Positions 1,886 through 33,626 of a stretch of 64,000 nt of DNA are shown one piece after another. The translations under genes were made by a program, and so were the position numbers. This DNA comes from Tetramitus jugosus (lineage: Eukaryota; Protista; Heterolobosea), in the NCBI GenBank assembly GCA_937625935.1, contig OW569392.1, forward strand, positions 248,001 through 312,000, given 5' to 3'. Within the stretch, counting starts at the first letter, position 1. The number at the start of each line of letters is the position of its first letter. The notes below the pieces were generated by a model. The model saw nothing but the letters and a program-made list of their open reading frames with translations, did not search any database and was not told the DNA's origin.

Positions 1886-3934
1886 CTACACTGTGTATGG
1901 CATGCATTCGATCCTGATTCGATCGATAAGCTTCTTAAGCGTGGGTTCATCTGTTGCACCCAAGCGCACCCTTCCAAACGCACGTGCCAACTCACTCTGC
2001 ACAGTCTTCCATTGACTTGCAGGCAATATGTCACGACAATAATAAAGCACAATATCAAACAAATCTTGTTTGCTATCAGCAACTGTACCAGGAGCGACTC
2101 TCATCCGATAAATGGCTCTTTCCATTCGTTCGATTGCAGCCCTGGATTCATTCAGTGCAAACAAGGCGGCTGCACTATGAAAATAGTGAGGCAAGTGATT
2201 GGGTAACACCTCTGAACACAAACCAAATGCGTCTACTGCTTTTTGAAGCCACGAGTCTCTCACTGCTTTATCATTCTTGTTCTGCATGGCCAATCCCTTG
2301 TAACTCAATGCTCTATAAATTAATACATCATCCTGATCCATCATCGCACTACTACCGATTGCATTAACATTCGCAGTTGTAGTAGACGTGGTCATTGAAG
2401 CAATTTGTTGTCTAATGGATGACAATGAAGCACAATCTTCCAACACCAGCGCAAAATTCTTAATCTTGAGATTGATTGTGATGCGCAACGTGTAATACTC
2501 TTGTAATTGAGGATCATTGTGGATGCACTCATTGAGACTCTGTGAAGCAAACAATGACAACTGTTTCTCAAATGATTTCAACTGTTCTTGGCAATGCTCC
2601 AACAATAGTGTTGTCATTTGTTGTTTTTCATTACTACCAGTATTACTACTAACAGTACTACTAGTATTACTACTGTTGTTGTTATGTTGTTTTTGAGAGA
2701 GGCGAATAGAGTTGATGGTGGATCGGAGTTGAGCATGTTGACGCAACGCATCCCACACTCGAGACTTCAAAATGAAAAAATTGCACACTTTTTTCATTAG
2801 AAAATATTCGTCTTGTTGTTTTTGTTTCTGTATTGCACTCATTGTCAATCCCTCACTATCATTATCATTACTACTTTCACTAGAAGAAGAAGAAGAAGAT
2901 GTAATGATAATGTTGTTGGACATCATTTTTTTCGATTGTTTCAATTCAATACTCTTCAACAACTTATCACAACTAGATGATGTATGGGTCAACTGTTCAT
3001 TCATCATGCACACACCAAACATGATTCGACAGAATTGAGCAAATATAGTGTCGTTTGTATAGGTTTGAAACCGTTGGAGTACAATGTGAAATTTATCATT
3101 GATTTCCTTGATAATCTCCTCTGGTTTCAATGTTTTGATATTCATTTTTGTGAAATGATTGAATGATGATGATGATGATGATTTGTTTTCTTCACTATGA
3201 TTAACATTTGATTTTTCTTGTTGTTGTTTTTTCTTCAAGTGTGATGATGATGACGATTGTTGTTGTTGTTGTTGTTGTTGTTGAGCCATTTTGAGCAATT
3301 GAGTCATGGATAGAGTATATTGTTGTATTCGTTGATCCATTTCTTTTCGAACATCTCTTGTCAAATAATGAAAATCATGTGTCCAATCCATCAACATTGA
3401 CAATTGTTGTTGTTGTTGTTGTTGTTGTTGATTGTCATTTGATACATTTTGTTGTTGTTGTTGTTGAGAGTGATGATGATAGGCTATTTTTCGTTGATTG
3501 GTTCGAATGCGCCAACAACTCTGCAAGAAATGAATGTAGAACGTGTGGACAAATTCGTTACCAAGTGTACTGTTGGGAACATCTGCACAATACTTTTCAA
3601 AAAAATGTTTCCAATCAATGTTTGTTCTTGAATGACCACTGCTACTACCACTACTATTACTACTACTTGTTGTTGTTGTTGATGTTGATGGTGTCACAGG
3701 TTGTTGCTTTTGTTGAGTAGATGTTGATGTGCTAGTTGAATTGTATCGTACTTGATTGGATGAAAAGAGACAAGAAGATTGATTGTATTGTTGTGATTGA
3801 TGTTCGAGAAAATGATTTTGATTGAGGAGTGAATGGTGGTGAGAAAAGGGTATCAATAATGATGATGATGGTGATGATGGTTTAGTGGAGATCCATTTGA
3901 GCAATATTTGTTGGTGCTGCCTTGTGCTCTTCAT
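1886..3934 (-). CDS. PolyQ/S-rich protein with C-terminal helical (TPR-like) repeats, possibly mitochondrial
   Basis: Long ORF; probable start ATG at 3934 in an A-rich context (MKSTRQHQQ). N-terminus is nearly free of acidic residues and has a presequence-cleavage-like QVRY|NST motif. C-terminus has TPR-like helices (YFHSAAALFALNESRAAIERMERA). Confidence 0.65.
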   Translation of the reverse strand: MKSTRQHQQILLKWISTKPSSPSSSLLIPFSHHHSLLNQNHFLEHQSQQYNQSSCLFSSNQVRYNSTSTSTSTQQKQQPVTPSTSTTTTSSSNSSGSSSGHSRTNIDWKHFFEKYCADVPNSTLGNEFVHTFYIHFLQSCWRIRTNQRKIAYHHHSQQQQQQNVSNDNQQQQQQQQQLSMLMDWTHDFHYLTRDVRKEMDQRIQQYTLSMTQLLKMAQQQQQQQQQSSSSSHLKKKQQQEKSNVNHSEENKSSSSSSFNHFTKMNIKTLKPEEIIKEINDKFHIVLQRFQTYTNDTIFAQFCRIMFGVCMMNEQLTHTSSSCDKLLKSIELKQSKKMMSNNIIITSSSSSSSESSNDNDSEGLTMSAIQKQKQQDEYFLMKKVCNFFILKSRVWDALRQHAQLRSTINSIRLSQKQHNNNSSNTSSTVSSNTGSNEKQQMTTLLLEHCQEQLKSFEKQLSLFASQSLNECIHNDPQLQEYYTLRITINLKIKNFALVLEDCASLSSIRQQIASMTTSTTTANVNAIGSSAMMDQDDVLIYRALSYKGLAMQNKNDKAVRDSWLQKAVDAFGLCSEVLPNHLPHYFHSAAALFALNESRAAIERMERAIYRMRVAPGTVADSKQDLFDIVLYYCRDILPASQWKTVQSELARAFGRVRLGATDEPTLKKLIDRIRIECMPYTV

Positions 3935-4602
3935 TTTTTTGGACGGAAAATGCTTTTTGTTTGGAGTGGTGAAAATTGCTTCGGAGAAAACCCAAAGGAA
4001 TCTGGAGTGTATTTGCATGGAAAGTTGTCAAGTGGTAGGTGAGTTCAATGGCTGTGTTGGGAGTGCTACTTCACATCATCGTCCAAGGGGACTTGACCCA
4101 TTGTTCCTCGACCAGATTCTCTGGAAAATCTATCTCCTTACTACTATTTACAAATGAAAATTGTCTGAAATCTACAGGTAGTTTCCTCAGTGATGGAATT
4201 GTTGGAAATCTTATCGGATATTCCTCTGTTATCTGTCTATCAGTCTCCTCAAAAGGGAATGTGACATCTCCCTTCCATTTGGTCGTGGGCCGAGGAATGA
4301 ATTTATGCGCAATCAACTCTTCAAAATAGCTCCTAACTTCGGACTTTATCCGCAACCCTTCAATCATCCTGGATAAACAATGTTGAATCAAGTATTGTGT
4401 CAACACCTAAACTGCCATCTCCAGCCACTTATACACGTGTATTCATTGTGTCACAACTTTGCCCTTGGTAGTCAAGATCCGCGACCGACAAAACCTGAAT
4501 GAAAAAAATCAAAGTTCACACTCCTCCAATCACAAAAAACAAAACAATCAACGTTCAATATTATCATTATTATACTCGTCTTATTAATTTTACTACCCAA
4601 CA

Positions 4603-7600
4603 ATGATACCAACAAGTGAGCAAGATAAAATGGCAGAGATTATCAGAATGATTGGCAGTCAAACCAATCGAACCTCAATCATGTCACAACAACCTCCACT
4701 GTTACAACCACAGCCACCACGAATTCCCTTCATGTTGTCCTCTACTGCTCCTCCACAGACAACAACAACACCAACACCAACTGTTGCCAACATGAATATT
4801 CATCATCATCATCACAACAATAACAACAATCATAATAATAACATGTTTTCCATCTCACTGCCGCCACAACAACAACAACAACCTCAACAACTTCAGCAAC
4901 AGTTACCTCAAGTGCAACAACCATTTCAACAACAACATGTTCAACAACAACAACCACCACCAGTTCATTTGCAATCCTATCAATCACCCATCTCATTTGT
5001 GCCGCAACAACCACAACCACAACAAATGACTGCATTTGAAAAACAACAACATCAACTCATGCAACAGCAACAACAATTACAGAAACAATATGAACAACTT
5101 CAACAACAACAATTACAGTTCCAACAACAACAACTTCAACTTCAAATGCAGTATGAAAAAATTTCTCCGAATTCTTGTAAACACTGTCGGGATAGTCATC
5201 GGAGATGTGATCGGAAATTACCATCGTGCACACAGTGCTCCAAACGTTCGATACAATGTCATTATGTACCATCGAAGAAGCGTAAGAATGAATCACCAGC
5301 CATCATTCTTCAACAATCTCAACAATCATTGTTGACTACCACAGGCAACAACAACAAGCATAGGAATAATAATAATACAAGCAGCAGCAGTAGTAATGAT
5401 GATAGTGAGAGTGATAGCAACAATAATAATAATAATAATAATAGGATGGAGTTGATGATGAGTCGACCATTGAAACAAGCAAGAGTCGAATACAATAATA
5501 ATCATCATACTGTCGAACAATCATCCTCCTTATTTTCATCATCTGTATCATCCATGTCATCTTCATCCTCATTATCAACAACAAGTAGTAGTAATGTTCA
5601 TTCACCTCCACTCTTATCAACCATTCAACAACAACAACAACAACAGCAAGAAGTGTATCAAGTGTTGAACCAAATTCCACACTTACTTGCTAGTCAACAA
5701 CATCAACATCAACATCAGCAGCAACATCAAACATCTCAAATCACTACTCTACCTCATGACAACATTATGAATCATAATAGTAACAATCTGAGTAGTATGA
5801 AGAATAATAATGACAATAACAGTAATAATCATAGTAGTATTAGTAATAATGATTATCAGAGATTATATCTCGCAACGTCTCAAATCTCTGACAAGTTCAT
5901 TACCATGACATCCAGAGAGCCCATTATTCAATTGTCTGCTGCTGTTGCTGCTGTTGCCAATTCTTCTTCTTCTCATTCTTCTTCCTTTAATACACTACAG
6001 CAACAACAACAACAACAACAACATAGTCAATCATCTCTACCATCACCATCATCATCATCAACAGCATCGCCATCATCATCAATCAATAGTCCATCTCCTA
6101 GTTACACTTCAGAGTCATCACCCATCAACACAAGTGCAAGTGACAGTAATGATGTTGCAATGGTACACCACCACCAGCAACAACAACAACAACCAACCCC
6201 TCCTCCTCTTCTCTCTTTATCATCATCACCTGCTGTGGCATCTGTGAGTATTCTTGAAGCGTGTTTTGATTTGATTGAACCTCAGAATGCAGGTAAAGAC
6301 TTTAAGGAATCAGTCATTGCACAACTGCTGTGGAATCAAATGACTTCCAAATCATCACTCGCATCGTCATCATCATCATCTACTTCACCATTGTCAAGTT
6401 CCACTGCCAATGCCGATGATCGTTCTGCCATTGCAAACATGAGTCAAAAAGATCAGGAACAGAGAGCACAACAAGTATTGGAAGAAAAGGCAAATCAAGC
6501 ATTGTGGTATTCGATTCAAGCAGTTGCACTGTTGCATATGCCATCCAAGGAACAAGAACCATATTTTGATGCACAGAAACGAATGATGATTTATGAGATC
6601 ATGTCCAAAAAGTTGGGTCAATACAAGGCAACGAGTCAAAATGACACGACATTCTTTCCGTGCAGCTTTGGTGTCAATACGGAATTTTTACTCAAGAGGA
6701 AGCGCAGTGAAATGGAGGACCATAATGATGAGAATGACGATGATGAAAATGGCGAGAATGATATTGAAGACAAGGATAATGGAGACAAGGATAATAATGA
6801 ATTGGCAAAGGCTATATCAGAGTTGCCTGATTTGGCTCGCTTGTTTTGCAAATTCTCCAAACTTCAACTCATTGAAACTGCAAGACTCATGTTCAACAGT
6901 GCTCGAACACTGTTGTTGGACGTGGAAGTGTTTCCTCATATTGGCACGCATATGAAACTGGCGCAAACATCGGCTCATTTGGTCAGTTTTCTGTTGGTGT
7001 CTGGTGAGAGAACAGAGGAGGCACATGTGTTTTTAAACTCGGCCAAAGTGTACCTGGATCGCGTGCGAGATGTTTTGCGCTTGGACGCAACCAAACTCAG
7101 TGGTCACGCACGAGATCAATTGGAAACGCAACAGCTTGCCATTGGAGGCTTGTACTCGGCATACACGTCTCTAAAGTCCGTTCTCTATGTCAACTATGCA
7201 CCGAGGACATCCGACTTTTATCGCAAGAAATCACTGAAAAAGTACTTGAAATTATCGATACGTGCATGGAAGGCGGTCGGTAATACCTCGAGAAGAGTCT
7301 TGTGGTCTCAAGACTGTCAAAATCCGCTGAGAAAACTCAAAGCAATCATCAATAGGAATCCTGAAGATGCAACGCACGACAGAAGACAATTGTATGACTT
7401 TTTGATGGGATGCAGAGAAATGAGAGGTAATATTGAACACTGCTCAGGGTTCACAAGAATTTGGAGACTCTTTACATTCACAATAGACATATTCGCTTTG
7501 GAGATTTTTGCAAGTCAAGCAGGTACTTGCAAAGACAAGTCCTTCTTCGATGTTTTGTGGGAGTTACAGCTCGAAACTGCTCATTTAGTGATCAGAGAGA

Positions 7601-8133
7601 TTTATTCGAGTCTTGGTCTCGTGATTACTGCTGGTGCTCGTCTTCTCATGATTATCAAGTTTACTTGTCGAATTCATATCGAACACTCTGCTCGTTTATG
7701 CTCTGGATCAACAAACAAGAAGGAACTTTTAGAGTGCTTGGCTTTTATGCACACAGATAGTTTGACATTGGATGCCATTGGTTTAAGGACTCCTGTGGCC
7801 GCGCTACAGGAACTCTCGGAGCAAATCAAACTTCAACAACAATACCATCAGCAATACCTTGCTCAACTGGACGGTTCATCTTGGTTAACCAACGCACCAA
7901 ATTCAACTCTAAGCAATCAAGATAATGGCAAGAGTGACATTTCGTTAGGTTCCATATCGAACATAACTTCCTGTGATGGAGACGAGAAGGGTGAAGAAGA
8001 GCCAGCTACGCAGTTCTTTGGATCCATTTATGAAACTTTTCAGTCAGGAGGAGACTTCACTCAGGAGCAACCTGTTGCAGAAGAGACAAACTTTTTCTTG
8101 GAATTCTTCAACTTGGAGGAGGGTTTCCAATAA
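4603..8133 (+). CDS. Zn(II)2Cys6 binuclear-cluster transcription factor with polyQ/N/S tracts
   Basis: CKHCRDSHRRCDRKLPSCTQCSKRSIQC (C-x2-C-x6-C-x6-C-x2-C-x6-C) at 5176-5259, followed by a basic KKRK and an acidic/aromatic C-terminal tail. Confidence 0.9.
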   Translation: MIPTSEQDKMAEIIRMIGSQTNRTSIMSQQPPLLQPQPPRIPFMLSSTAPPQTTTTPTPTVANMNIHHHHHNNNNNHNNNMFSISLPPQQQQQPQQLQQQLPQVQQPFQQQHVQQQQPPPVHLQSYQSPISFVPQQPQPQQMTAFEKQQHQLMQQQQQLQKQYEQLQQQQLQFQQQQLQLQMQYEKISPNSCKHCRDSHRRCDRKLPSCTQCSKRSIQCHYVPSKKRKNESPAIILQQSQQSLLTTTGNNNKHRNNNNTSSSSSNDDSESDSNNNNNNNNRMELMMSRPLKQARVEYNNNHHTVEQSSSLFSSSVSSMSSSSSLSTTSSSNVHSPPLLSTIQQQQQQQQEVYQVLNQIPHLLASQQHQHQHQQQHQTSQITTLPHDNIMNHNSNNLSSMKNNNDNNSNNHSSISNNDYQRLYLATSQISDKFITMTSREPIIQLSAAVAAVANSSSSHSSSFNTLQQQQQQQQHSQSSLPSPSSSSTASPSSSINSPSPSYTSESSPINTSASDSNDVAMVHHHQQQQQQPTPPPLLSLSSSPAVASVSILEACFDLIEPQNAGKDFKESVIAQLLWNQMTSKSSLASSSSSSTSPLSSSTANADDRSAIANMSQKDQEQRAQQVLEEKANQALWYSIQAVALLHMPSKEQEPYFDAQKRMMIYEIMSKKLGQYKATSQNDTTFFPCSFGVNTEFLLKRKRSEMEDHNDENDDDENGENDIEDKDNGDKDNNELAKAISELPDLARLFCKFSKLQLIETARLMFNSARTLLLDVEVFPHIGTHMKLAQTSAHLVSFLLVSGERTEEAHVFLNSAKVYLDRVRDVLRLDATKLSGHARDQLETQQLAIGGLYSAYTSLKSVLYVNYAPRTSDFYRKKSLKKYLKLSIRAWKAVGNTSRRVLWSQDCQNPLRKLKAIINRNPEDATHDRRQLYDFLMGCREMRGNIEHCSGFTRIWRLFTFTIDIFALEIFASQAGTCKDKSFFDVLWELQLETAHLVIREIYSSLGLVITAGARLLMIIKFTCRIHIEHSARLCSGSTNKKELLECLAFMHTDSLTLDAIGLRTPVAALQELSEQIKLQQQYHQQYLAQLDGSSWLTNAPNSTLSNQDNGKSDISLGSISNITSCDGDEKGEEEPATQFFGSIYETFQSGGDFTQEQPVAEETNFFLEFFNLEEGFQ
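4800..6200 (+). repeat. Coding trinucleotide microsatellites (CAA, AAT, TCA, CAT)
   Basis: Runs of caacaacaa, aataataat and tcatcatca encoding Q, N, S and H tracts. Similar tracts occur at 3160-3900 on the minus strand. Confidence 0.9.
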
Positions 8134-21391: not shown

Positions 21392-24300
21392 ATGAACATC
21401 AACCAGCGGAGTTTTAGCTCTCACCAACAACAACTTCGGCCTTGGAATGGGTTTGGCTTCTCCCATTCTCTGGACATGGAAATGACAGATTATCATCCAA
21501 CATTCAATCCAAACAGTGAACCTGGTAAACCCATCAATTCCATCATTTTCAAATATTATGATGTGGAACGTTTGGAACAAAAATTATCAGTCAAAATGTA
21601 TGGAGCTTATTATGTCTGTTCTGCAGATATCTGTGGGTGCATCCAGTTTTTTGTTGGATGTTCCATTTTTTTTGTTGTCGTTTGAAATTTCAATTTTTGT
21701 TTACTTGATAATGATGTATATTCACTCTGCATGATCATCCATCATCGATCGAACACGCACACATATTTTGTGTGTCTATAGACATTCAATCGAAGGAGAC
21801 GTATCACAATTCTTTAAGCCATTGTACAATAGTGAGAGTGAGGCCTTTAGTGGATGCATGTATGTGGAAGTTCGTCTGGAACACAAGTCATTCTTTGGTA
21901 CGGGATTCAACAGTTTGCAAGACAATATTCCATTGTGCTTGCCCAAGAGAACTCGTTTTATTAATTGTATGGATAACAATTCGATGAGTGGTGGTAGTAA
22001 TAGTCATCATAGTAGTAGCAGTGCCACAGGCATGAATAATCAGAATAACATGAATACGGGTAGTGGTAGTGCAGGTGGAAAAGTGTGGGATGAGTGGATT
22101 CATTTTAAAGTCAAGTACAATGAACTACCAGAGGAAACTGTGGTACATTTTATTGTCTGGGACGTGAGTGAGCCAATGACACAGACTGTGATTGGAAGTG
22201 CTACTTTTCCCTTGTTCGGCAAGAAGGGTAAATTGAAGACTGGACCATTTAAAGTGTGTTTGAATTTGTTTGAGGAGGATTCGACAGAGTTGAGTTCTCA
22301 CCTACGTGCAGGTGACGATGATTTGGTGAAGATTGAACAGTTGGCTCGCTGTGTGTCATCTGAATACAGAATCGAGTGGCTTGATCGATACACTTTCCAG
22401 AAGATGAAACGGATAAAGCAACGAAGAGTGACAAACGGTTCGTGTAATACACTATTGTTGAATATTGAACTACCAATGTTTGAACATCCTGTGATGAATA
22501 GTCAGTTATTAGATATGAGTTCTCAAGGCTCGCAGCAGCTGAATAATGTGAATTCCCTGTCGGCATCAGAGTCAAGGACCGAAATTGATACATTGGCAGA
22601 ATCACCACGTGAGTCTCCCCCTGATATATTTGATGCCCTGGCAGGCTCGAGTCATTTTACATCAGAACAAATCCCATATGAATCAAGTAAGAGTAAGGGC
22701 AATGATCAATTTCGTGTCGAGTTTACCATGCGACAATTGGATTGGATCGATGATGGAGAGGTAAATCAGGAGAACTTGGTCGAGCAGAAACATTTGAAGT
22801 TGTCGATTGGTTTGTCGAGTGGTCTAACAGATCACGATTTGAAACCAAACGCAGAGCAAACGAGGAAAATACAACGAATTCTGGACTATCCACCTCTACA
22901 CGAAACATCTATCGAAGAGAAGAGTCTATTGTGGCGATTTAGATACTATTTGAGATCAAACAAGAGAGCATTGATTAAGTTCTTAAAATGTGTTGATTGG
23001 GGTTATATTAAAGAAAGTAAAGAGGCAACAAAACTTATTGAACAGTGGGCAGAGATTGGTACTGTTGATGCGTTGGCTTTGCTCAGTCGGTTCTTTAAGA
23101 ATGTGGGAGTTGTTCGAGATTATGCAGTAAATATACTGCGCAATGCTGAAGATGAAGAAATATTGGATGTGCTGCTTCAACTAGTGCAAGCATTGCGATA
23201 TGAAATTGATAGTTCTCAGGGTTCGTCTCTCATGAATCAAACAGGTCTCGAAAATTCCAATTTGGCCAAGTTTTTATTTATGAGAGCAACAAACAATTTC
23301 GTCATCGCCAATAATCTTTACTGGTACTTGAGTGTGGAGTCTGAGGGGCCAAAATGTGGTGCAATGTTTAGTGAGCTCCTACACAAGTTTAGTCTTTTTT
23401 TAAAGAAGAACAACCTGGAATATCTTGAGAAACTCTTGAGACAACACAGGCTTGTTCAGAAACTGAGGGAGCTCGGTAAATCGATCAAGCAATTAAAGGA
23501 GATTAGACCCAAGAAGGTAGTTGCACTGAAGAAAATTCTGGCTACAAGAGAAGCTCCATGGGACTGGGATGTCATCTTTACGTCAAGCATCTCACCAAAG
23601 TTCCCTTCGAGTCCACTTACGCTACCCCTATCACCCACAACACTCGTGACTGGTATTTATGAAGACAAGGCCAATATTTTCAAGAGTGCCATGAGTCCTC
23701 TTTTAATTCCTTTTAAGGAACATACGGGAGAAACATATCATACCATTTTTAAGACTGGTGATGATTTGCGTCAGGATCAACTCATTATCCAGCTCATCAC
23801 ACTCATGGATAAGTTACTCAAGAGAAATGGTTTGGATCTAAAGTTAACCCCCTATCCGGTACTGGCGTGTGGTCAATCCTATGGATTCGTAAGGTGTGTC
23901 TCTCCTAGCATCGCCATTTCTCAAGTCATTGCTCAAGGAGATATCAAGTCCTACCTCCGAAAGTACAATGATGATGATTCGTTCGATCAAGCCTGTCTCA
24001 ATTTCATTCATAGTTGTGCTGGCTATTGTGTGATCACATACATTTTAGGTATTGGTGATCGTCATCTGGACAATGTACTTCTCACTCCTAAGGGCCACAT
24101 GTTCCACATTGACTTTGGTTTCATCCTCGGTCGCGATCCAAAACCGTTTGCTCCACCAATGAAGTTATGTAAGGAAATGGTTGAAGGCATGGGAGGCTCA
24201 AACTCCGAGGGATATATTACCTTTAAACAATTGTGCTGTACCGCGTACAACATTCTCCGGAAGAATGCCGATTTGATCCTAAACATGTTTATTTTAATGG

Positions 24301-24536
24301 CTGACGCTTCCATTCCAGACATTGAGCACAATGCCAATTCGGCAAATGGTCAGTCAACAGGCAAAGCATTGGACCCCCTGAAGAACATGATGAAGGTACA
24401 AGAGAAGTTTAAACCGGAGCTCAACGATGCGCAAGCGATTATATTTATGCAGAGTATCATCAACGAGAGCGAGAAGGCGTTGTTCCCTCAGGTCACGGAA
24501 ACAATCCACAGGTGGGTGCAGTACTGGCGGAGCTAA
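21392..24536 (+). CDS. VPS34: Class III phosphatidylinositol 3-kinase Vps34; exons 21392-21597 and 21782-24536
   Basis: C2, helical and kinase domains: FKSAMSP, FKTGDDLRQDQL, GIGDRHLDN, HIDFGFILGRDPKPF, C-terminal IHRWVQYWRS. Intron 21598-21781 gives LSVKIHSIEG. Confidence 0.96.
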
Positions 24537-29574: not shown

Positions 29575-30918
29575 TTATTCTAATATTTTATGTGTGTCAC
29601 ATAGATTCTTCTTGCTTCGTTTATACTTCCAAGTGTTCAATATTTGTTTTATCAAGTGCAAGGCTCGCTCTACTCTCAACAAATCACGTAAATAAATTCG
29701 AGTTTGTCCTGTATGATAGTACAACGCCAAGTTGTTTCGTCCATTGTTAGTTAGTTTGGAATTGTCATGTAAATCCAACCATTGAAAGTCTGGACTATGA
29801 CTATGTTTTCCATTCAACATAAACAGAAGAAACCTCTCCATTCCTGCATCTCCAATCATATTTTCAGAGAGATCGATTGTCCGGATCAGATTTTCACCAG
29901 TCAACAGTGAATAGGTTAGAAACTTGATTCCTTCGTCTCCTACTGAACATCCTTTCATAGATAGATGATGAATATTAGAAAAACTCGATCCTGTGCATAT
30001 TGAACGAAGTGTTTGATCTGTTAAAGAAACATTCTTGTTCAGTATCAGAGAATTCAACCGTTTCAAGATGGTAAAATACTTGGCTGATTCATCCGTAATG
30101 GCTGTTGAAGAAAGGTCTAAATGAGAGATTTGAGGGAGGTTCGAACATATTGATGCTACTCCTTGGTCAGTGATGTCATTGTATTGGAGTATTAACTTCT
30201 CGATAATGTTGTTTATCCCCAGCAATTGGGGCGACTGTATTAGATTGTATGAAAAATCCATGTAGCAACTTGATGTAAGGCTGATTATTGAACAAAATTG
30301 TTGATCATCAATACTGGCAGAGTGATAACCATCATATGAAGGACTAGCACTATTTTCGTCAGGTGTTTCAATTTCATTCGTTTTCTGTTCGTTCCTATTG
30401 CCATCGTTGGGATATTCTAGAGGCAGTACTGGTGTTTCATAGATAACGTGAGGAAATACCTTCCTTATTGTTCTTCTCTGATCATACTTAAAATATCCAA
30501 ACGACACCAACTCATTCCTCGAGTTGAATCTCTCGTCATCATGAACGAAAAAATAGGGATACCACATGAAATAATCCAATTGATACATGGATAATATATT
30601 CATAATCGCCTTATGCGGTAGTTTCGAAAACATTTGCCCGTCGTCAATGACCACATCATCGCTTTCCATGACATGAATATCTCGAGGATCCAACCATTTT
30701 GCTCTCTCAATTAAGTCATCTAATTCTTTCAGCTCTAATTGGATGTTCCGATGATTTAACATACTTTTCTCACCTAAGGTAGCTCTCTTCACAATAGAGA
30801 ACTCTTGATTGGAACCGTTGAGTCCTTTTCCTAACAAATGAACTGTTTCGAGCATTCTCTGCTCAAACCGTTGAATAATCGAGCTCATTCCATCAAGATA
30901 ATGAGCCATGTTGTTCAT
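29575..30918 (-). CDS. Leucine-rich repeat protein (RI/F-box-LRR-like repeats)
   Basis: LxxLxLxxNxIxDxG repeats (LILQYNDITDQG, IDLSENMIGDAG, LDLHDNSKL). First ATG at 30918. Confidence 0.78.
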   Translation of the reverse strand: MNNMAHYLDGMSSIIQRFEQRMLETVHLLGKGLNGSNQEFSIVKRATLGEKSMLNHRNIQLELKELDDLIERAKWLDPRDIHVMESDDVVIDDGQMFSKLPHKAIMNILSMYQLDYFMWYPYFFVHDDERFNSRNELVSFGYFKYDQRRTIRKVFPHVIYETPVLPLEYPNDGNRNEQKTNEIETPDENSASPSYDGYHSASIDDQQFCSIISLTSSCYMDFSYNLIQSPQLLGINNIIEKLILQYNDITDQGVASICSNLPQISHLDLSSTAITDESAKYFTILKRLNSLILNKNVSLTDQTLRSICTGSSFSNIHHLSMKGCSVGDEGIKFLTYSLLTGENLIRTIDLSENMIGDAGMERFLLFMLNGKHSHSPDFQWLDLHDNSKLTNNGRNNLALYYHTGQTRIYLRDLLRVERALHLIKQILNTWKYKRSKKNLCDTHKILE

Positions 30919-30952
30919 AAGAGTAAGTTGGTTCTGTCTTTGTTTCACCAAG

Positions 30953-30957
30953 AAAAA
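30953..30957 (-). terminator. Pol III oligo(T) terminator of tRNA-Met
   Basis: TTTTT on the minus strand 6 nt downstream of the tRNA 3' end. Confidence 0.7.
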
Positions 30958-30963
30958 GGTGTT

Positions 30964-31037
30964 TGCGGGTTGTGAGGATCGAACTCACGACCTTAGGATT
31001 ATGAGACCTACGCGACTACCAGCTGCGCCAAACCCGC
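30964..31037 (-). tRNA. tRNA-Met(CAT), elongator type, intronless
   Basis: Minus strand GCGGGTT-TG-GCGCAGCTGGTAGTCGCG-TAGGT-CTCATAA-TCCTA-AGGTC-GTGAG-TTCGATC-CTCAC-AACCCGC-A: perfect acceptor and T stems, TTC T-loop, no encoded CCA. Confidence 0.96.
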
Positions 31038-31067
31038 CTATATTTGGATGTCACCAATTTGGATATC

Positions 31068-31083
31068 ACACAGTGGTTTTGGT
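31068..31083 (+). repeat. Left target-site duplication ACACAGTGGTTTTGGT
   Basis: Identical to 32396-32411. Confidence 0.92.
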
Positions 31084-32396
31084 AAAAAACGCAGAGAAAA
31101 CGGCATCACATGTCTGGTGATTCAACAAATTTGGTGCAGGAATACGGCAACAGCCGTTATGCAGTGTGGACCACTGCACGGAAAGGCTCTAGGCCAAGTG
31201 ACAGAGAGGTCGTCATTACTGGCAACGGTAATGGTGTCTCTCAGTCATCTTTGGCAAGAAAGATAGGAGAGGAGTTTGGTGACTGGCTCAACCGAGTCCA
31301 GGTCATCAAGAGGAAAGGCCAGCAACGCTTTGTTGCATGGGTGACGGTCAAGGATGACCGCATCTATGACTTTGTTGAGTTGTTCAACAAAGAGAGGAGG
31401 ATTGGCAACAGCACTGCTGCACCCAAGCGCAGTGTTGATTGCACAAGAAAGGTGGTCGTCCATGGCATGAAGAACATGTCAGTGGACGACATCAAGAAGC
31501 TACTGGGGCCTGAGAAGGTTGCCAGTGTGCTCAAGAAGCGTGACACTGCTTTCGTGGTCATGGGTGATGAAACCTATGCACGAGCAGTGCTCAGCGGAGA
31601 GCAAAAGGTCAAGGCCACGGTCACTCGATACGTCGAGAGACCACATGATCCTCTCAAGGCTGTCAACAAGAGATTGACGAAGATGTACGAGGAGCTGCTG
31701 ACGGTGGTTGACGCACTGCGTCGACAGGTCACAGAACTCACCAAGGAATTGGCAAAGACAAAGGGTCAAGAGGGCAACAAACCGGTTCCGATACAGGAAC
31801 AAGAAGTTGTACAAAGAACTGCTCCTGGTCTAATGGAGACAGAAGAACAAAGGAGTGCAACACCACTACCAACAGTGCCTGTTGTACAGCTCAGCGCTGA
31901 AAATCGGCAAATTCTGGAGCAAGTGAATGCCACTTCTCCAGTGTTCGCAAGAGTGAAGAAGGAAATTGCTGCATTGGCACTTGCTGCTGCACGCAAAAGG
32001 TATGGTTTGACTGAGGACGAACCAGTCATTGTGGATGTGGATGATGACTCCGAAAAGGAGATTCAGAGTCCACAACTCAATGACAACAAGAAGAGGAGTG
32101 CCAGGATCACACTGGGTGATCTGATGAGCAACAAGGCCCAAAACAAGAAAACAACAACAGATGGCTCTGTGTCCATCGACGGTCCTACTACAAGGTTACG
32201 CTCTTTGATGAAGGGCATCAACCAAAACACTCACCAGAGTGATTATTCCAACCTGTAGGTGCACCGTCGGGGACAACAAGAGAAGAAGAGTGAATGACGC
32301 CCTACGGGTCGTCACTCACAAAACAAGTCAATAAATGAGCAATCGTGTGCTTGCTGCGCAAGCACACATGGTTGTATGGAACAAAAAAAAAAAAAA
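31084..32396 (+). mobile_element. Poly(A)-tailed retroposed element (ORF1-only, non-autonomous non-LTR retrotransposon candidate) upstream of tRNA-Met
   Basis: 15-16 bp TSD; A14 tail at 32383-32396; AATAAA at 32330; intronless single ORF. Spot count gives ~50% GC versus ~37% in the neighbouring gene. Confidence 0.85.
31110..32258 (+). CDS. ORF1/Gag-like nucleic-acid-binding protein: two RRM-like domains, coiled coil, disordered tail
   Basis: RRM-like units EVVITG...RFVAWVTV and KVVVHGM...DTAFVVMGDETYARAVL; heptads VNKRLTKMYEELLTVVDALRRQVTELTKEL; intact 382 aa. Confidence 0.72.
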   Translation: MSGDSTNLVQEYGNSRYAVWTTARKGSRPSDREVVITGNGNGVSQSSLARKIGEEFGDWLNRVQVIKRKGQQRFVAWVTVKDDRIYDFVELFNKERRIGNSTAAPKRSVDCTRKVVVHGMKNMSVDDIKKLLGPEKVASVLKKRDTAFVVMGDETYARAVLSGEQKVKATVTRYVERPHDPLKAVNKRLTKMYEELLTVVDALRRQVTELTKELAKTKGQEGNKPVPIQEQEVVQRTAPGLMETEEQRSATPLPTVPVVQLSAENRQILEQVNATSPVFARVKKEIAALALAAARKRYGLTEDEPVIVDVDDDSEKEIQSPQLNDNKKRSARITLGDLMSNKAQNKKTTTDGSVSIDGPTTRLRSLMKGINQNTHQSDYSNL

Positions 32397-32411
32397 CACA
32401 GTGGTTTTGGT
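32396..32411 (+). repeat. Right target-site duplication ACACAGTGGTTTTGGT
   Basis: Directly abuts the poly(A) tract; identical to 31068-31083. Confidence 0.92.
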
Positions 32412-32585
32412 TTTTGAGGACGGCGATGGAATGGGCGTTGTTGCGTGGTTTGGATTGTTTGTTGCCGTTTTGCAACTCTGTTGTGTCTGATGCTGTTTCA
32501 ACCTTCAAACTCCGACTTGGAACGCAAAAATAAGAACAGACAGAATTCGCCGCTTGCTTGCAAACAAAAAAACACATTAACAAGA

Positions 32586-33626
32586 ATGAGCAACAGATCC
32601 ACAAACAAGACGAGCAACAAATCGCGTCGCACAGGCAACGCCTTTACCAAAAACGCAACAGCAGCTGCACCCATAACCAACACTGATGATGATGACGATT
32701 TCGATTACCTCTCACCAAATACCAGTACAACCACTACTACTAGCAGTAGCAATAGCAAATCATCAAAAGTCACATCTACCACATCAACAGATCTATATGA
32801 AAATACTAGTACTCACAATGTAGATGACGATGCACAAACCATTAAACAAATGACTCAATTGGTGGAAACTACGGTTGAAAATCTCCGAAGCGACAAAAAA
32901 TTTTTTGAGGAAGCATTACCAAAGCTAGGCACAGACAAGGACAATCGAAAGCTCAGAACAGACATTAAGAAACATTCCTCGCAAACAACCCAATGGATCA
33001 AAAACACTCAAAGCACACTCAAACAGCTCTCTACTCCAAAAAACACTGGTTCCAAGCGACAATTTGAAAAATTGAAGAGAGAAATGGAAGAAAGCTTAAA
33101 CACTGCCCTGTCATTGCTCAAGCAAGTAGAACACAAGGAGAAACAGCATGTTCTCTCACAAAAGGATCAACTGGAACAGCTCAAGAGGGCTCAAGAGATT
33201 GAACAGGAGAATATGGAGAGCAAGAAGCAGAGAGAAGAAGAAGAGCGAATGCGACTTGTGGACTACCAGAAAAAAAAACAAGAACACATTTTTTTGGAAA
33301 ATCAAATTGCGCACAATGAAAAAATCATTGGTGAACGAGAGGATGACATTATGGAAATTGAGCAGGATATTCGTGATATTCATCAAACGTTCAAGGAGAT
33401 GAATATGATTGTGAAGCATCAACAGGTTGGATTGGACATGATTGAGGAGAATGTGGAAAGAACTGTGATTCATGTGACTGAAGGTACGAACAATCTGGAG
33501 AAGGCCAACGGCTATGACAAGAGGAGCAGAAATTTGATTTGTATCATCATGTTGATCATTTTGATTTTGGCAGTTGTTCTGGCGATTGTGTTGGTTGTCG
33601 TACTCAAATTCACTCTTCACTTTTAA
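32586..33626 (+). CDS. Endosomal/vacuolar Qa-SNARE (syntaxin-7/Pep12/Vam3-like)
   Basis: Habc region LGTDKDNRKLR; SNARE motif EREDDIMEIEQDIRDIHQTFKEMNMIVKHQQVGLDMIEENV; C-terminal TM anchor. Confidence 0.9.
   Translation: MSNRSTNKTSNKSRRTGNAFTKNATAAAPITNTDDDDDFDYLSPNTSTTTTTSSSNSKSSKVTSTTSTDLYENTSTHNVDDDAQTIKQMTQLVETTVENLRSDKKFFEEALPKLGTDKDNRKLRTDIKKHSSQTTQWIKNTQSTLKQLSTPKNTGSKRQFEKLKREMEESLNTALSLLKQVEHKEKQHVLSQKDQLEQLKRAQEIEQENMESKKQREEEERMRLVDYQKKKQEHIFLENQIAHNEKIIGEREDDIMEIEQDIRDIHQTFKEMNMIVKHQQVGLDMIEENVERTVIHVTEGTNNLEKANGYDKRSRNLICIIMLIILILAVVLAIVLVVVLKFTLHF

What the first reader, a model, noticed from the sequence alone, without database searches (positions are those of the whole stretch)
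30964..32411. Candidate tRNA-gene-targeting non-LTR retroelement inserted 46 bp upstream of tRNA-Met
Seen: a ~1.3-kb insert (31084-32396) ends in A14 and is bracketed by a perfect duplication, ACACAGTGGTTTTGGT (31068-31083 and 32396-32411). Its 5' end lies 46 nt from the first base of a tRNA-Met gene, head-to-head, and it is more GC-rich than the flanking gene. Established: poly(A) plus a ~15-bp TSD marks target-primed reverse transcription. Dictyostelium TRE5-A inserts roughly 50 bp upstream of tRNA genes in this orientation, with ORF1 contacting TFIIIB; yeast Ty1/Ty3 also use Pol III genes as safe havens in compact genomes. Inference: this is an independent tRNA-upstream-targeting retrotransposon family in a probable heterolobosean, which I do not know to be described. 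A single copy cannot prove targeting.
Basis: partly seen in the sequence, partly recalled or inferred. Interest (0 to 1): 0.93.

Follow-up and report, generated by a model that had tools for sequence, protein, structure and literature searches.

The report
Retrotransposon family aimed at tRNA genes
The 1.3-kb insert is one of at least 40 copies of a small poly(A) retrotransposon that lands about 45 bp upstream of tRNA and 5S rRNA genes, always head-to-head, in a heterolobosean amoeba. This lineage is very distant from Dictyostelium, yet the insertion geometry is that of its TRE5 elements.

Summary

- **The insert.** Window 31084-32395 has an A14 tail and a perfect 16-bp target-site duplication. 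Its 5' end lies 46 bp from tRNA-Met, in the opposite orientation.
- **Copy number and position.** The 26-Mb genome holds at least 40 copies at 90-99% identity. Of 30 copies examined, 18 sit 40-52 bp upstream of tRNA genes of 12 amino-acid types. Three sit 37-46 bp upstream of 5S rRNA genes and one next to a decayed tRNA. Seven lie in head-to-tail stacks behind another element's poly(A) tail. One is a 5'-truncated copy in a nest.
- **What the element encodes.** It carries only a 382-aa ORF1-type protein. The model shows two RRM-like domains, a long helix and a basic tail. The ORF is intact in 24 of 27 full-length copies, with dN/dS about 0.27. There is no reverse transcriptase.
- **Likely partners.** Related 5-kb elements with ORF1 plus an APE-endonuclease/RT/zinc-finger ORF2 share its 5' start, its 3' stem-loop and tail motif, and its target. 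They probably mobilise it.
- **Host and relatives.** The host is a heterolobosean: Vps34 is about 62% identical to Willaertia and Naegleria. Metagenome relatives repeat the pattern.
- **Literature.** I found no report of Pol III-gene-targeted retroelements outside yeasts and dictyostelids.

First readers of this scan noted the same system in at least 8 other windows of this genome. None of those notes had been followed up.

The parts
30964..31037 (-). tRNA-Met (anticodon CAT) gene, the Pol III target. It is intact after the insertion.
   Evidence: ARAGORN.
31038..31083 (.). 46-bp spacer between the tRNA 5' end and the element 5' end. It keeps the whole tRNA-proximal upstream region intact.
   Evidence: Sequence. 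The same 40-52 bp spacer occurs in 18 other copies.
31068..31083 (+). 5' copy of the target-site duplication, ACACAGTGGTTTTGGT.
   Evidence: the repeat finder family D1, 100% identical.
31084..32395 (+). Family-A element: a 1.3-kb ORF1-only, poly(A)-tailed, non-autonomous non-LTR retroelement.
   Evidence: At least 40 genomic copies at 90-99% identity, mostly full length. Each has its own TSD and A-tail.
31084..31109 (+). Very short 5' UTR that starts AAAAAACGC. The same start is shared by all families of the superfamily.
31110..32258 (+). ORF1-type gene, 382 aa.
   Evidence: the ORF listing. It is 30% identical (E 4e-27) to the ORF1 of an autonomous element. The ORF is intact in 24 of 27 full-length copies, and dN/dS is about 0.27.
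31197..31604 (+). Two tandem beta-alpha-beta-beta-alpha (RRM-like) domains, residues about 30-165.
   Evidence: AlphaFold2 model, pLDDT about 80 in this part. Top Foldseek PDB matches are tandem RRMs at E about 1e-4, with low TM-scores.
31650..31763 (+). Long predicted helix, residues 181-218, possibly a coiled coil. A disordered region, two more helices and a basic tail follow.
   Evidence: Weak coiled-coil-type Pfam hits over residues 183-289.
32330..32335 (+). AATAAA signal in the 3' UTR.
   Evidence: Sequence. It is conserved at the same place in the tails of the other families.
32339..32374 (+). 3'-terminal stem-loop closed by GCAAUC/GGUUGU. It is proposed as the site the partner's reverse transcriptase recognises.
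   Evidence: MFE -21.2 kcal/mol, z -3.4. Equivalent hairpins occur in the older A subfamily, in family B and in autonomous-type tails.
32375..32396 (+). Tail motif UAUGGAAC followed by A14. The last A is shared with the TSD.
   Evidence: The motif GTTGTAT[GT][GA]AAAAA occurs 277 times in the genome, against 5 for the reversed control.
32396..32411 (+). 3' copy of the target-site duplication.

Best explanation
**What it is.** The insert is a young, intact copy of 'family A'. This is an ORF1-only, non-autonomous member of a superfamily of poly(A)-tailed non-LTR retrotransposons in a heterolobosean amoeba. The superfamily integrates position-specifically upstream of RNA polymerase III genes (tRNA and 5S rRNA).

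**Shown.**
- Copies end in poly(A) and are flanked by 13-17-bp duplications of unrelated sequence. Some are 5'-truncated.
- Their 5' ends face the tRNA or 5S gene at about 37-52 bp.
- The duplication spans roughly -28 to -44 relative to the mature tRNA 5' end. The tRNA-proximal upstream region therefore survives, and the same site is hit again, which builds head-to-tail stacks.
- Related 5-kb elements encode a homologous ORF1 and an ORF2 with an APE-type endonuclease, a reverse transcriptase and a weak zinc-finger match. They use the same target.
- All families share a 5' start (A-run plus CGC) and a 3' module: AATAAA, a stem-loop closed by CAAC/GUUG, UAU(G/U)(G/A)A, then poly(A).
- The family-A ORF is under purifying selection.

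**Inferred.**
- Family-A RNA is bound by its own ORF1 protein.
- It is copied by target-primed reverse transcription using ORF2 protein borrowed from an autonomous partner that recognises the shared 3' stem-loop.
- The first nick falls about 28 bp upstream of the tRNA, on the tRNA-sense strand. The second falls about 16 bp further out.
- The site is chosen by contact with the Pol III initiation complex (most likely TFIIIB, which tRNA and 5S promoters share), not by DNA sequence. This parallels Dictyostelium TRE5-A.
- Which element protein makes that contact is unknown.
For: **Family and TPRT hallmarks**
- 55 matches in the genome, of which at least 40 are long copies at 90-99% identity.
- Poly(A) tails and individual 13-17-bp TSDs.
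- 5'-truncated copies.
- No LTRs or TIRs.

**Targeting within this genome**
- Of 30 copies, 18 lie next to tRNA genes of 12 amino-acid types, on the opposite strand, 40-52 bp away.
- Three lie 37-46 bp from 5S genes, and one lies next to a partial tRNA.
- Seven follow another element's poly(A) tail plus a TSD.
- The chance of 18 of 30 falling in such a window is about 1e-59, even assuming 1000 tRNA genes.
- In one stack the same TSD appears three times: tRNA, then 44 bp, then an autonomous element, then a family-A copy.
- In an element-blind sample of 20 tRNA genes, 11-12 carry a superfamily member upstream in the same orientation.
- At least 11 of 29 dispersed 5S genes have a correctly oriented 3' motif just upstream. 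This comes from a hand cross-reference; p is about 6e-11.

**Replication outside this genome**
- Metagenome contigs carrying ORF1 relatives at 41-95% identity have a tRNA at 44-58 bp (L051, L053, L054, L076, L079, L080).
- One has a 5S gene (L082), and one shows a stack (L084).

**Autonomous partner**
- ORF1 (341 aa) and ORF2 (1284 aa) overlap by 4 nt.
- RVT_1 matches at E 3e-25.
- The endonuclease model has pLDDT 84, and its best matches are the human L1 endonuclease structures 1VYB and 2V0R at E 2e-14.
- The QE, GDHN, SRID and SDH motifs are conserved in 8 lineages.
- zf-RVT matches weakly.

**ORF1 and its selection**
- ORF1 homology: E 4e-27 and at least 118 genomic matches.
- 24 of 27 ORFs are intact, and dN/dS is 0.27.

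**3' module**
-.
- One closing pair covaries: C-G, U-A and U-G.
- The stem lengthened from 6 to 10 bp in the younger A subfamily, with pairing kept.

**Comparison with TRE5**
- TRE5 inserts 40-54 bp upstream of tRNA genes and 37-41 bp upstream of 5S genes, in opposite orientation, and its ORF1 binds TFIIIB (PMC5911963).
Against: - No protein contact with the Pol III machinery was shown. The ORF1p-TBP co-fold gave no verdict.
- Trans-mobilisation is inferred from shared termini and the lack of an RT. It was not observed.
- The closest autonomous ORF1 found is only 30-38% identical to the family-A protein, so the actual partner lineage is not pinned down.
- The two U6 genes carry no element within 1.5 kb upstream. 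This is hard to square with a simple 'any TFIIIB-bound gene' rule, though n = 2.
- No empty allele of this particular site was recovered from public reads.
- The census covers 30 family-A copies, 20 tRNA genes and 29 5S genes, not the whole genome.
Confidence: 0.85

Rival explanations
1. Integration is aimed by DNA sequence or DNA shape upstream of Pol III genes. The endonuclease would recognise a motif or a bent or AT-rich structure, with no protein tether to TFIIIB, TFIIIC or Pol III.
For: - Upstream regions of tRNA genes here carry recurrent AT-rich motifs such as CTATATTTAG next to the coding region.
- Some APE-type LINEs (R1, TRAS, the Tx1 group) are sequence-specific. This point rests on general knowledge.
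Against: - The TSDs and the bases at both nick positions show no shared sequence across 20 or more sites.
- tRNA genes of 12 amino-acid types and 5S genes, with unrelated flanks, are hit at the same distance.
- The distance is measured from the gene, not from any upstream motif.
Confidence: 0.1
2. Insertion is random. Only copies in the harmless zone upstream of tRNA genes survive selection in a gene-dense genome, so the pattern reflects retention rather than targeting.
For: The genome is compact: genes flank the tRNA within a few hundred bp. That would make most random insertions harmful.
Against: - Retention cannot produce a window about 10 bp wide or a single orientation.
- It cannot produce re-use of the identical nick positions, giving three copies of one TSD.
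- Young copies at 97-99% identity show the same placement.
- Another LINE family in the same genome sits away from tRNA genes.
Confidence: 0.03
3. The insert is a one-off processed retrocopy of a cellular RRM-protein mRNA that happened to land near a tRNA gene.
For: - The insert looks like an mRNA copy: short 5' UTR, one ORF, AATAAA and a poly(A) tail.
- The protein has RRM-like folds.
Against: - There are at least 40 copies with independent TSDs at equivalent sites.
- The ORF is homologous to the ORF1 of RT-bearing elements.
- It has no Pfam RRM hit and only 34 relatives among 1.84 billion representatives.
Confidence: 0.01
4. Family A is a domesticated or host-serving gene family that is kept next to tRNA genes, rather than a selfish element. 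Purifying selection on the ORF would then reflect a host function.
For: - dN/dS is 0.27 and 24 of 27 ORFs are intact.
- Contigs of the family are present in a soil metatranscriptome.
Against: - Copy-specific TSDs, poly(A) tails, 5' truncations, stacks and 90-99% identity classes are signatures of continuing retrotransposition.
- Purifying selection among copies is expected if only RNAs encoding a working ORF1 protein are copied (cis-preference).
Confidence: 0.03

Closest known systems
Dictyostelium discoideum TRE5-A and other TRE5 elements (tRNA gene-targeted non-LTR retrotransposons)
   Same: [quoted passage not shown] Here the distances are 40-52 and 37-46 bp.
- Both have oligo(A) tails and short TSDs.
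- ORF2 has the same APE-RT-ZF architecture.
- Both have ORF2-lacking derivatives that still transpose. For TRE5-A.2 this rests on my own knowledge.
- Both build stacks at one tRNA gene, and both live in a compact genome.
   Different: - The host belongs to Discoba, not Amoebozoa.
- The 5' UTR is only 16-27 nt, with no A/B/C modules.
- ORF1 and ORF2 overlap by ATGA rather than needing a -1 frameshift.
- ORF1 is a 340-380-aa protein with tandem RRM-like domains. None of its 34 profile relatives is longer than 340 aa, whereas TRE5-A ORF1 is a 51-kDa protein (PMC5911963), so it is not among them.
- The 3' stem-loop and tail motif may have no TRE5 counterpart; I know of none.
- RT phylogeny was not done, so common descent or horizontal transfer is not excluded.
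Polysphondylium pallidum NLTR-B (Spaller et al. 2016, PMC5006619)
   Same: It is a non-LTR element unrelated to the TREs that independently sits 39-64 bp upstream of tRNA genes. This is a precedent for convergent acquisition of the TRE5-like position.
   Different: NLTR-B carries an RNase H domain and splits APE, RT and RNase H into separate ORFs. The elements here have APE-RT-ZF in one ORF2. The host supergroup is also different.
HAL1 (half-L1) elements of mammals and other ORF1-only non-autonomous LINE derivatives
   Same: These are poly(A) retroelements that keep only an ORF1 under selection and depend on the ORF2 protein of autonomous relatives. This comparison rests on my own knowledge.
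   Different: - HAL1 shows no Pol III-gene targeting.
- Family A is only 30-38% identical in ORF1 to the autonomous elements found, so it is an old independent lineage rather than a recent deletion derivative.
Yeast Ty3 and Ty1 (LTR retrotransposons targeted to Pol III genes)
   Same: They use Pol III genes as safe havens in a compact genome through contact with TFIIIB (Ty3) or Pol III subunits (Ty1) (PMC5911963).
   Different: They integrate through an integrase rather than by target-primed reverse transcription. Positions differ: 1-4 bp from the transcription start for Ty3, and a 1-kb periodic window for Ty1. There is no fixed orientation rule of this kind.
Stringent-type LINE/SINE pairs (for example the eel UnaL2/UnaSINE1 pair in the L2 clade)
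   Same: A conserved 3'-terminal stem-loop shared by autonomous and non-autonomous partners serves as the reverse-transcriptase recognition site. This comparison rests on my own knowledge.
   Different: Here the dependent partner is protein-coding rather than a Pol III-transcribed SINE, and the tail ends in poly(A) rather than short repeats.

Membership tests
Non-LTR (LINE-type, TPRT) retroelement | 3' poly(A) or A-rich tail at one end only | tested here: met
   A14 in the window copy. A-tails of 9 to more than 30 nt in the other copies.
Non-LTR (LINE-type, TPRT) retroelement | Target-site duplications of variable sequence and about 10-20 bp | tested here: met
   16 bp in the window copy. 13-17 bp, each with its own sequence, in about 25 copies.
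Non-LTR (LINE-type, TPRT) retroelement | 5'-truncated copies with intact 3' ends | tested here: met
   Family-A copies starting at element positions 236, 272, 308 and 321. Autonomous copies starting inside ORF2 directly at the tRNA-proximal site.
Non-LTR (LINE-type, TPRT) retroelement | No LTRs and no terminal inverted repeats | tested here: met
   The repeat finder on 30900-32500.
Autonomous APE-type LINE | The element's own ORF2 with an endonuclease and a reverse transcriptase | tested here: not met
   The 1.3-kb element has a single 382-aa ORF and no RT or EN. These domains are present in the related 5-kb elements. The insert is therefore non-autonomous.
TRE5-like integration behaviour | [quoted passage not shown] | tested here: met
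   40-52 bp in 18 copies, median 44. 46 bp in the window.
TRE5-like integration behaviour | Fixed orientation, with the element 5' end facing the tRNA gene | tested here: met
   All 18 tRNA-adjacent and all 3 5S-adjacent copies. All upstream hits in the sample of 20 tRNA genes except one distant fragment.
TRE5-like integration behaviour | Also targets 5S rRNA genes at about 40 bp | tested here: met
   37, 40 and 46 bp in L026, L007 and L020. 47 bp at C20:209823. A 5S gene in the metagenome relative L082.
TRE family proper (Dictyostelium TRE5/TRE3 lineage) | RT and ORF2 group with the TREs in a phylogeny | not testable with these tools
   No TRE reference sequences were available. ORF2 has only 24-28% identical word-sharing hits in the protein database, none named TRE.
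TRE family proper (Dictyostelium TRE5/TRE3 lineage) | Modular A/B/C untranslated regions and a -1 frameshift between ORF1 and ORF2 | tested here: not met
   The 5' UTR is 16-27 nt. ORF2's ATG overlaps ORF1's stop, a 4-nt overlap. The TRE features are taken from PMC5911963.
TRE family proper (Dictyostelium TRE5/TRE3 lineage) | ORF1 protein binds TFIIIB subunits | tested here: inconclusive
   The ORF1p-TBP co-fold returned no verdict.
SINE | Short, non-coding, with an internal Pol III promoter derived from tRNA, 5S or 7SL | tested here: not met
   The element is 1.3 kb and coding, and no tRNA or 5S-like part lies inside it.
RRM-containing LINE ORF1 proteins | RRM fold in ORF1p | tested here: inconclusive
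   The model shows two beta-alpha-beta-beta-alpha units at pLDDT about 80, and tandem RRMs top the Foldseek list (E about 1e-4). TM-scores are low (0.15-0.34), ACT domains score similarly, and the model rests on only 6 sequences. There is no Pfam RRM hit.

The most novel reading that the evidence does not exclude
Heteroloboseans (Discoba) evolved, independently of dictyostelids and yeasts, a whole guild of Pol III-gene-directed LINEs. It comprises several autonomous lineages and at least two ORF1-only lineages. These elements reach almost exactly the TRE5 geometry: about -45 bp, head-to-head, at tRNA and 5S genes. In this reading a tandem RRM-like ORF1 protein supplies RNA packaging and perhaps the tether to TFIIIB. 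A shared 3' stem-loop lets ORF1-only elements borrow the ORF2 protein. That would make the upstream edge of TFIIIB a universally 'discoverable' docking site for target-primed reverse transcription.
Probability: 0.45. Interest if true: 0.85.

Novelty: new variant of a known kind. Interest (0 to 1): 0.72.

Why it matters
Position-specific integration next to Pol III genes is the textbook 'safe haven' strategy of retrotransposons in compact genomes. So far it rests on two groups of organisms, yeasts and dictyostelids.

A third, very distant lineage with the same geometry gives an independent natural replicate. That geometry is about 45 bp upstream, opposite orientation, with 5S genes included. 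It allows a test of whether the TFIIIB-bound promoter edge is the common docking surface and which element protein reads it.

The system is also unusually rich. It has several autonomous lineages, and ORF1-only parasites under purifying selection. It also has a simple shared 3' RNA hairpin, with more than 300 tails in 26 Mb. That makes it a compact model for LINE partner recognition and cis-versus-trans preference.

For genome annotators, about half of the sampled tRNA genes in this organism carry such an insertion. These ORFs should not be annotated as host genes.

Tried and rejected
- **Pfam on the 382-aa ORF.** Nothing significant was found.
- **Word-index protein search of ORF2.** It gave only remote, unnamed LINE hits at 24-28% identity, so no clade could be assigned. 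The ESM Atlas look-alikes were generic APE+RT LINE clusters without taxa.
- **PDB sequence search with ORF2.** It matched R2 reverse transcriptases (E 5e-20) and not human L1 ORF2p. I do not read a clade from this.
- **PDB sequence search with the endonuclease domain.** It found nothing. The fold search did find matches.
- **ORF1p (residues 1-220) with host TBP core, complex prediction.** No verdict was returned, which is no evidence either way.
- **Empty-allele search in public runs.** The contigs laid on 30400-33000 are short and fragment at the repeat, and no joint skipping 31084-32395 was listed. Presence or absence polymorphism is therefore unresolved. The same call shows family contigs in a soil metatranscriptome, but contaminating DNA cannot be excluded.
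- **Second batch of 20 tRNA loci and the 5S loci.** The 5S occupancy was instead cross-referenced by hand from coordinates.
- **U6 genes.** No element lies within 1.5 kb upstream of either copy.
- **A fixed one-helical-turn offset between family B and family A.** I considered this (median about 55 bp against 44 bp). I do not claim it, because family B ranges from 47 to 58 bp with n = 7.
- **Species name.** The organism is coded in the run table. I did not try to name the species beyond 'heterolobosean, neither Naegleria nor Willaertia'.
Full report
**1. The observation**

- A tRNA-Met(CAT) gene lies at 30964-31037 on the minus strand.
- Forty-six bp further on, a 1.3-kb stretch begins with AAAAAACGC.
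- It carries one ORF, 31110-32258 (382 aa).
- It has an AATAAA at 32330-32335 and ends in A14 (32383-32396).
- It is bracketed by a perfect 16-nt direct repeat at 31068-31083 and 32396-32411. There are no LTRs or inverted terminal repeats.
- GC rises to 0.47-0.53 inside the insert, against 0.36-0.40 in the neighbouring genes.

**2. It is a repeat family**

A DNA search of the window's own assembly (26.35 Mb, 56 contigs) gave 55 matches. About 40 are long copies at 90-99% identity, and most are full length. I call this family A.

After orienting 30 loci, nearly every complete copy has its own A-tail. Each also has its own 13-17-bp target-site duplication of unrelated sequence. Several copies are 5'-truncated. 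These are the marks of target-primed reverse transcription.

**3. Where the copies lie**

ARAGORN and Rfam on the 30 loci gave the following.
- Eighteen copies have a tRNA gene on the opposite strand, with 40-52 bp (median 44) between the tRNA 5' end and the element 5' end. The genes are Met, Thr, Asn, Gln, Arg, Val, Asp, Lys, Gly and Ser, with several anticodons.
- Three copies face a 5S rRNA gene at 37, 40 and 46 bp.
- One copy faces a partial tRNA.
- Seven copies begin a TSD's length after the poly(A) tail of another element, so they sit in head-to-tail stacks.
- One copy is a 5'-truncated copy in a nest.

The duplication starts 26-30 bp and ends 42-47 bp upstream of the tRNA in most cases. 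Even assuming 1000 tRNA genes, 18 of 30 random insertions falling in such an oriented 10-bp window has a probability of about 1e-59.

In one stack the order is: an intron-containing tRNA, 44 bp, a 5-kb element, then a family-A copy. The same 13-bp duplication appears three times. The identical nick positions were therefore used twice. This is expected if the tRNA-proximal copy of the duplication restores the target.

**4. An element-blind check**

I fetched 20 tRNA genes chosen only by their Rfam score (4 Lys, 16 Ile). Eleven or twelve carry a member of the superfamily upstream, in the head-to-head orientation. These are family A, a second short family B, full-length autonomous elements and 5'-truncated autonomous elements.

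For 5S genes, at least 47 dispersed copies were found. I cross-referenced their coordinates by hand with the 3'-tail motif list. At least 11 of the 29 genes on contigs 1-13 have a correctly oriented tail within 3.5 kb upstream. The expectation is about 0.5, and p is about 6e-11.

The two U6 genes carry nothing within 1.5 kb.

**5. The autonomous relatives**

The genome has 74 RVT_1 matches. One complete element lies on the minus strand of L047.
- It starts AAAAAAACGCGAGCAC-ATG.
- It encodes ORF1 (341 aa) and ORF2 (1284 aa), which overlap by 4 nt.
- ORF2 has RVT_1 at E 3e-25 and a weak zf-RVT match near the C-terminus.
- Its N-terminal domain keeps the QE, GDHN, SRID and SDH motifs across eight lineages.
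- The AlphaFold2 model of that domain has pLDDT 84 and pTM 0.83. Its best matches are the human LINE-1 endonuclease structures 1VYB and 2V0R (E 2e-14, TM 0.66-0.73), followed by APE1.

Eleven of twelve RT loci examined are 41-72% identical to this ORF2.

The twelfth is an unrelated LINE (22% identity) with APE, RT and RNase H domains. It has a 17-bp TSD and no poly(A) tail, and no tRNA gene was found in its 9.5-kb locus. Pol III targeting is therefore a property of one superfamily, not of every LINE in this genome.

**6. What the insert encodes**

- The 382-aa protein has no Pfam family.
- It is 30% identical (E 4e-27) to the autonomous ORF1 over its first 209 residues.
- It is 47% identical to the family-B ORF.
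- It is 38% identical to the ORF1 of another autonomous lineage, in L059.
- At least 118 ORF1-type matches exist in the genome.
- A profile search of 1.84 billion representative proteins found only 34 relatives, mostly short metagenome fragments. It is therefore not a cellular RRM gene.

The AlphaFold2 model was built from six sequences and has a mean pLDDT of 58, rising to about 80 for residues 30-165. It shows two beta-alpha-beta-beta-alpha units, a long helix (181-218), a disordered stretch, two more helices and a basic tail. Foldseek ranks tandem RRM proteins first (UP1, HuD, TIA-1) at E about 1e-4. TM-scores are low and ACT domains lie close behind, so 'RRM-like' is a reasonable label but not a proven one.

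The ORF is intact in 24 of 27 full-length copies despite up to 7% DNA divergence. Pairwise dN/dS is 0.27. The lineages that produced new copies were therefore selected for a working protein. This fits cis-preference of an ORF1 protein for its own RNA.

**7. Shared ends**

All families start with an A-run followed by CGC, 12-27 nt before the ATG.

All families end with the same 3' module: AATAAA, a hairpin closed by CAAC(N)/(N)GUUG, then UAU(G/U)(G/A)A and poly(A).
- The loop varies from 3 nt to a 26-nt inserted hairpin.
- The fifth closing pair occurs as C-G, U-A and U-G.
- The younger A subfamily, which includes the window copy, lengthened the inner stem from 6 to 10 bp with pairing kept.
- The minimum-free-energy fold recovers the hairpin in five of the seven tails folded, with z between -2 and -3.5. 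It was not recovered in the two auto1-type tails, L047 and L023.
- The tail motif occurs 277 times in the genome, against 5 for a reversed control. That count does not include the commonest family-A variant.

I infer that this hairpin is what the partner's reverse transcriptase recognises, and that it is how the RT-less families A and B are copied.

**8. Host and relatives**

The Vps34 gene in the window is 63% identical to that of Willaertia magna, 62% to Naegleria lovaniensis and 51% to Acrasis kona. The host is therefore a heterolobosean outside those genera. Public runs holding the stretch come from one coded organism and from groundwater, soil, rhizosphere and freshwater metagenomes.

Metagenome contigs carrying ORF1 relatives at 41-95% identity repeat the pattern.
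- A tRNA gene lies at 44-58 bp in L051, L053, L054, L076, L079 and L080.
- A 5S gene lies upstream in L082.
- A stack is seen in L084.

Contigs of the family also occur in a soil metatranscriptome. This suggests transcription but does not prove it.

**9. Comparison with what is known**

The 2018 review of Pol III-directed retrotransposons lists only yeast and dictyostelid elements. TRE5 inserts 40-54 bp upstream of tRNA genes and 37-41 bp upstream of 5S genes, in opposite orientation. Its ORF1 binds TBP, Brf1 and Bdp1 (PMC5911963).

Spaller et al. found TRE-like elements only in dictyostelids, plus a convergent element, NLTR-B (PMC5006619). Full-text searches combining Naegleria or Heterolobosea with retrotransposon and tRNA terms returned nothing relevant.

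The present elements behave like TRE5 and share its ORF2 architecture. They fail two structural features of the TRE family: modular UTRs and the -1 frameshift. Their ORF1 is not detectably related. I therefore file them as 'works like TRE5', not 'is a TRE'. Whether the resemblance is convergent needs an RT phylogeny, which I could not run.

**10. Mechanism and how sure I am**

| Status | Statement | Confidence |
|---|---|---|
| Shown | Retrotransposition by a TPRT-type process into a fixed, sequence-independent position upstream of tRNA and 5S genes | about 0.9 together with the next row |
| Shown | Repeated use of the same site; an RT-less, ORF1-only family under selection; autonomous relatives with the same target and ends | about 0.9 together with the row above |
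| Inferred | Trans-mobilisation through the shared 3' hairpin | about 0.75 |
| Inferred | Site choice by contact with the Pol III initiation complex, probably TFIIIB | about 0.5 |
| Inferred | ORF1 protein acts as the adaptor | about 0.3 |

The co-fold of ORF1p with host TBP gave no verdict.

**11. Earlier notes of this scan**

First readers described the same system in at least eight other windows of this genome. None of those notes had been followed up. My results agree with them, with one exception. 'Every tRNA locus' is too strong, because about 55-60% of the tRNA genes I sampled are occupied.

Noticed in passing
L050 (G000:C1:198000-207500), minus strand about 2760-7960: An unrelated LINE family. 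ORF1 is 375 aa and ORF2 is 1324 aa with APE, RT and RNase H domains. It has a 17-bp TSD (TCCCCAAATTGCTGGAA) and no poly(A) tail, and no tRNA gene was found in the 9.5-kb locus. It serves as an internal control showing that not all LINEs here target Pol III genes.
   Followed up: partly
G000 contig ends: C3:2089-2301, C17:2337-2549, C1:4436-4678, C10:606104-606316, C9:603492-603713, C48:379851-380063: Weak RVT_1 matches (about 24 bits) inside long open frames of up to 1273 aa, all within a few kb of contig ends where contig lengths are on record. This may be a subtelomeric RT-related gene or element family.
   Followed up: no
G000, at least 47 places: 5S rRNA genes are dispersed singly over many contigs. 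They are not in tandem arrays or linked to rDNA. Two lie head-to-head about 1 kb apart at C1:57053-58313.
   Followed up: partly
L056-L075 and window 31038-31050: A recurrent AT-rich motif lies directly upstream of the mature tRNA 5' end. It reads CTATATTTAG on the strand running away from the gene, and TATATTTGG at the window's tRNA-Met. It may be a Pol III upstream or start-site element.
   Followed up: no
G000:C54 and C56: Two contigs have identical tRNA coordinates (941, 12773, 14364, 14438, 44585). They are probably the mitochondrial genome assembled twice.
   Followed up: no
L087 (G000:C13:144867-147971) and L088 (G000:C9:54165-57269): The two U6 snRNA genes have no superfamily element within 1.5 kb upstream, unlike the tRNA and 5S genes.
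   Followed up: partly
L056, L071, L054, L080, L010, L005: Family-B elements (5' start AAAAAAACGCCG-ATG, tail GTTGTATTAAAA) sit 47-58 bp from the tRNA, median about 55 bp. Family A sits at a median of about 44 bp. The difference is roughly one helical turn, but the sample is small.
   Followed up: partly
L046 (G000:C25:179980-183636), minus strand, start of the long frame: The open frame of a 5'-truncated autonomous copy reads straight through the reverse complement of the adjacent tRNA gene. Gene callers would produce a chimeric protein here.
   Followed up: no
window 21768-24533 (+): A class III PI3-kinase (Vps34) gene with PI3K_C2, PIK and kinase domains. I used it to place the host among heteroloboseans.
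   Followed up: yes
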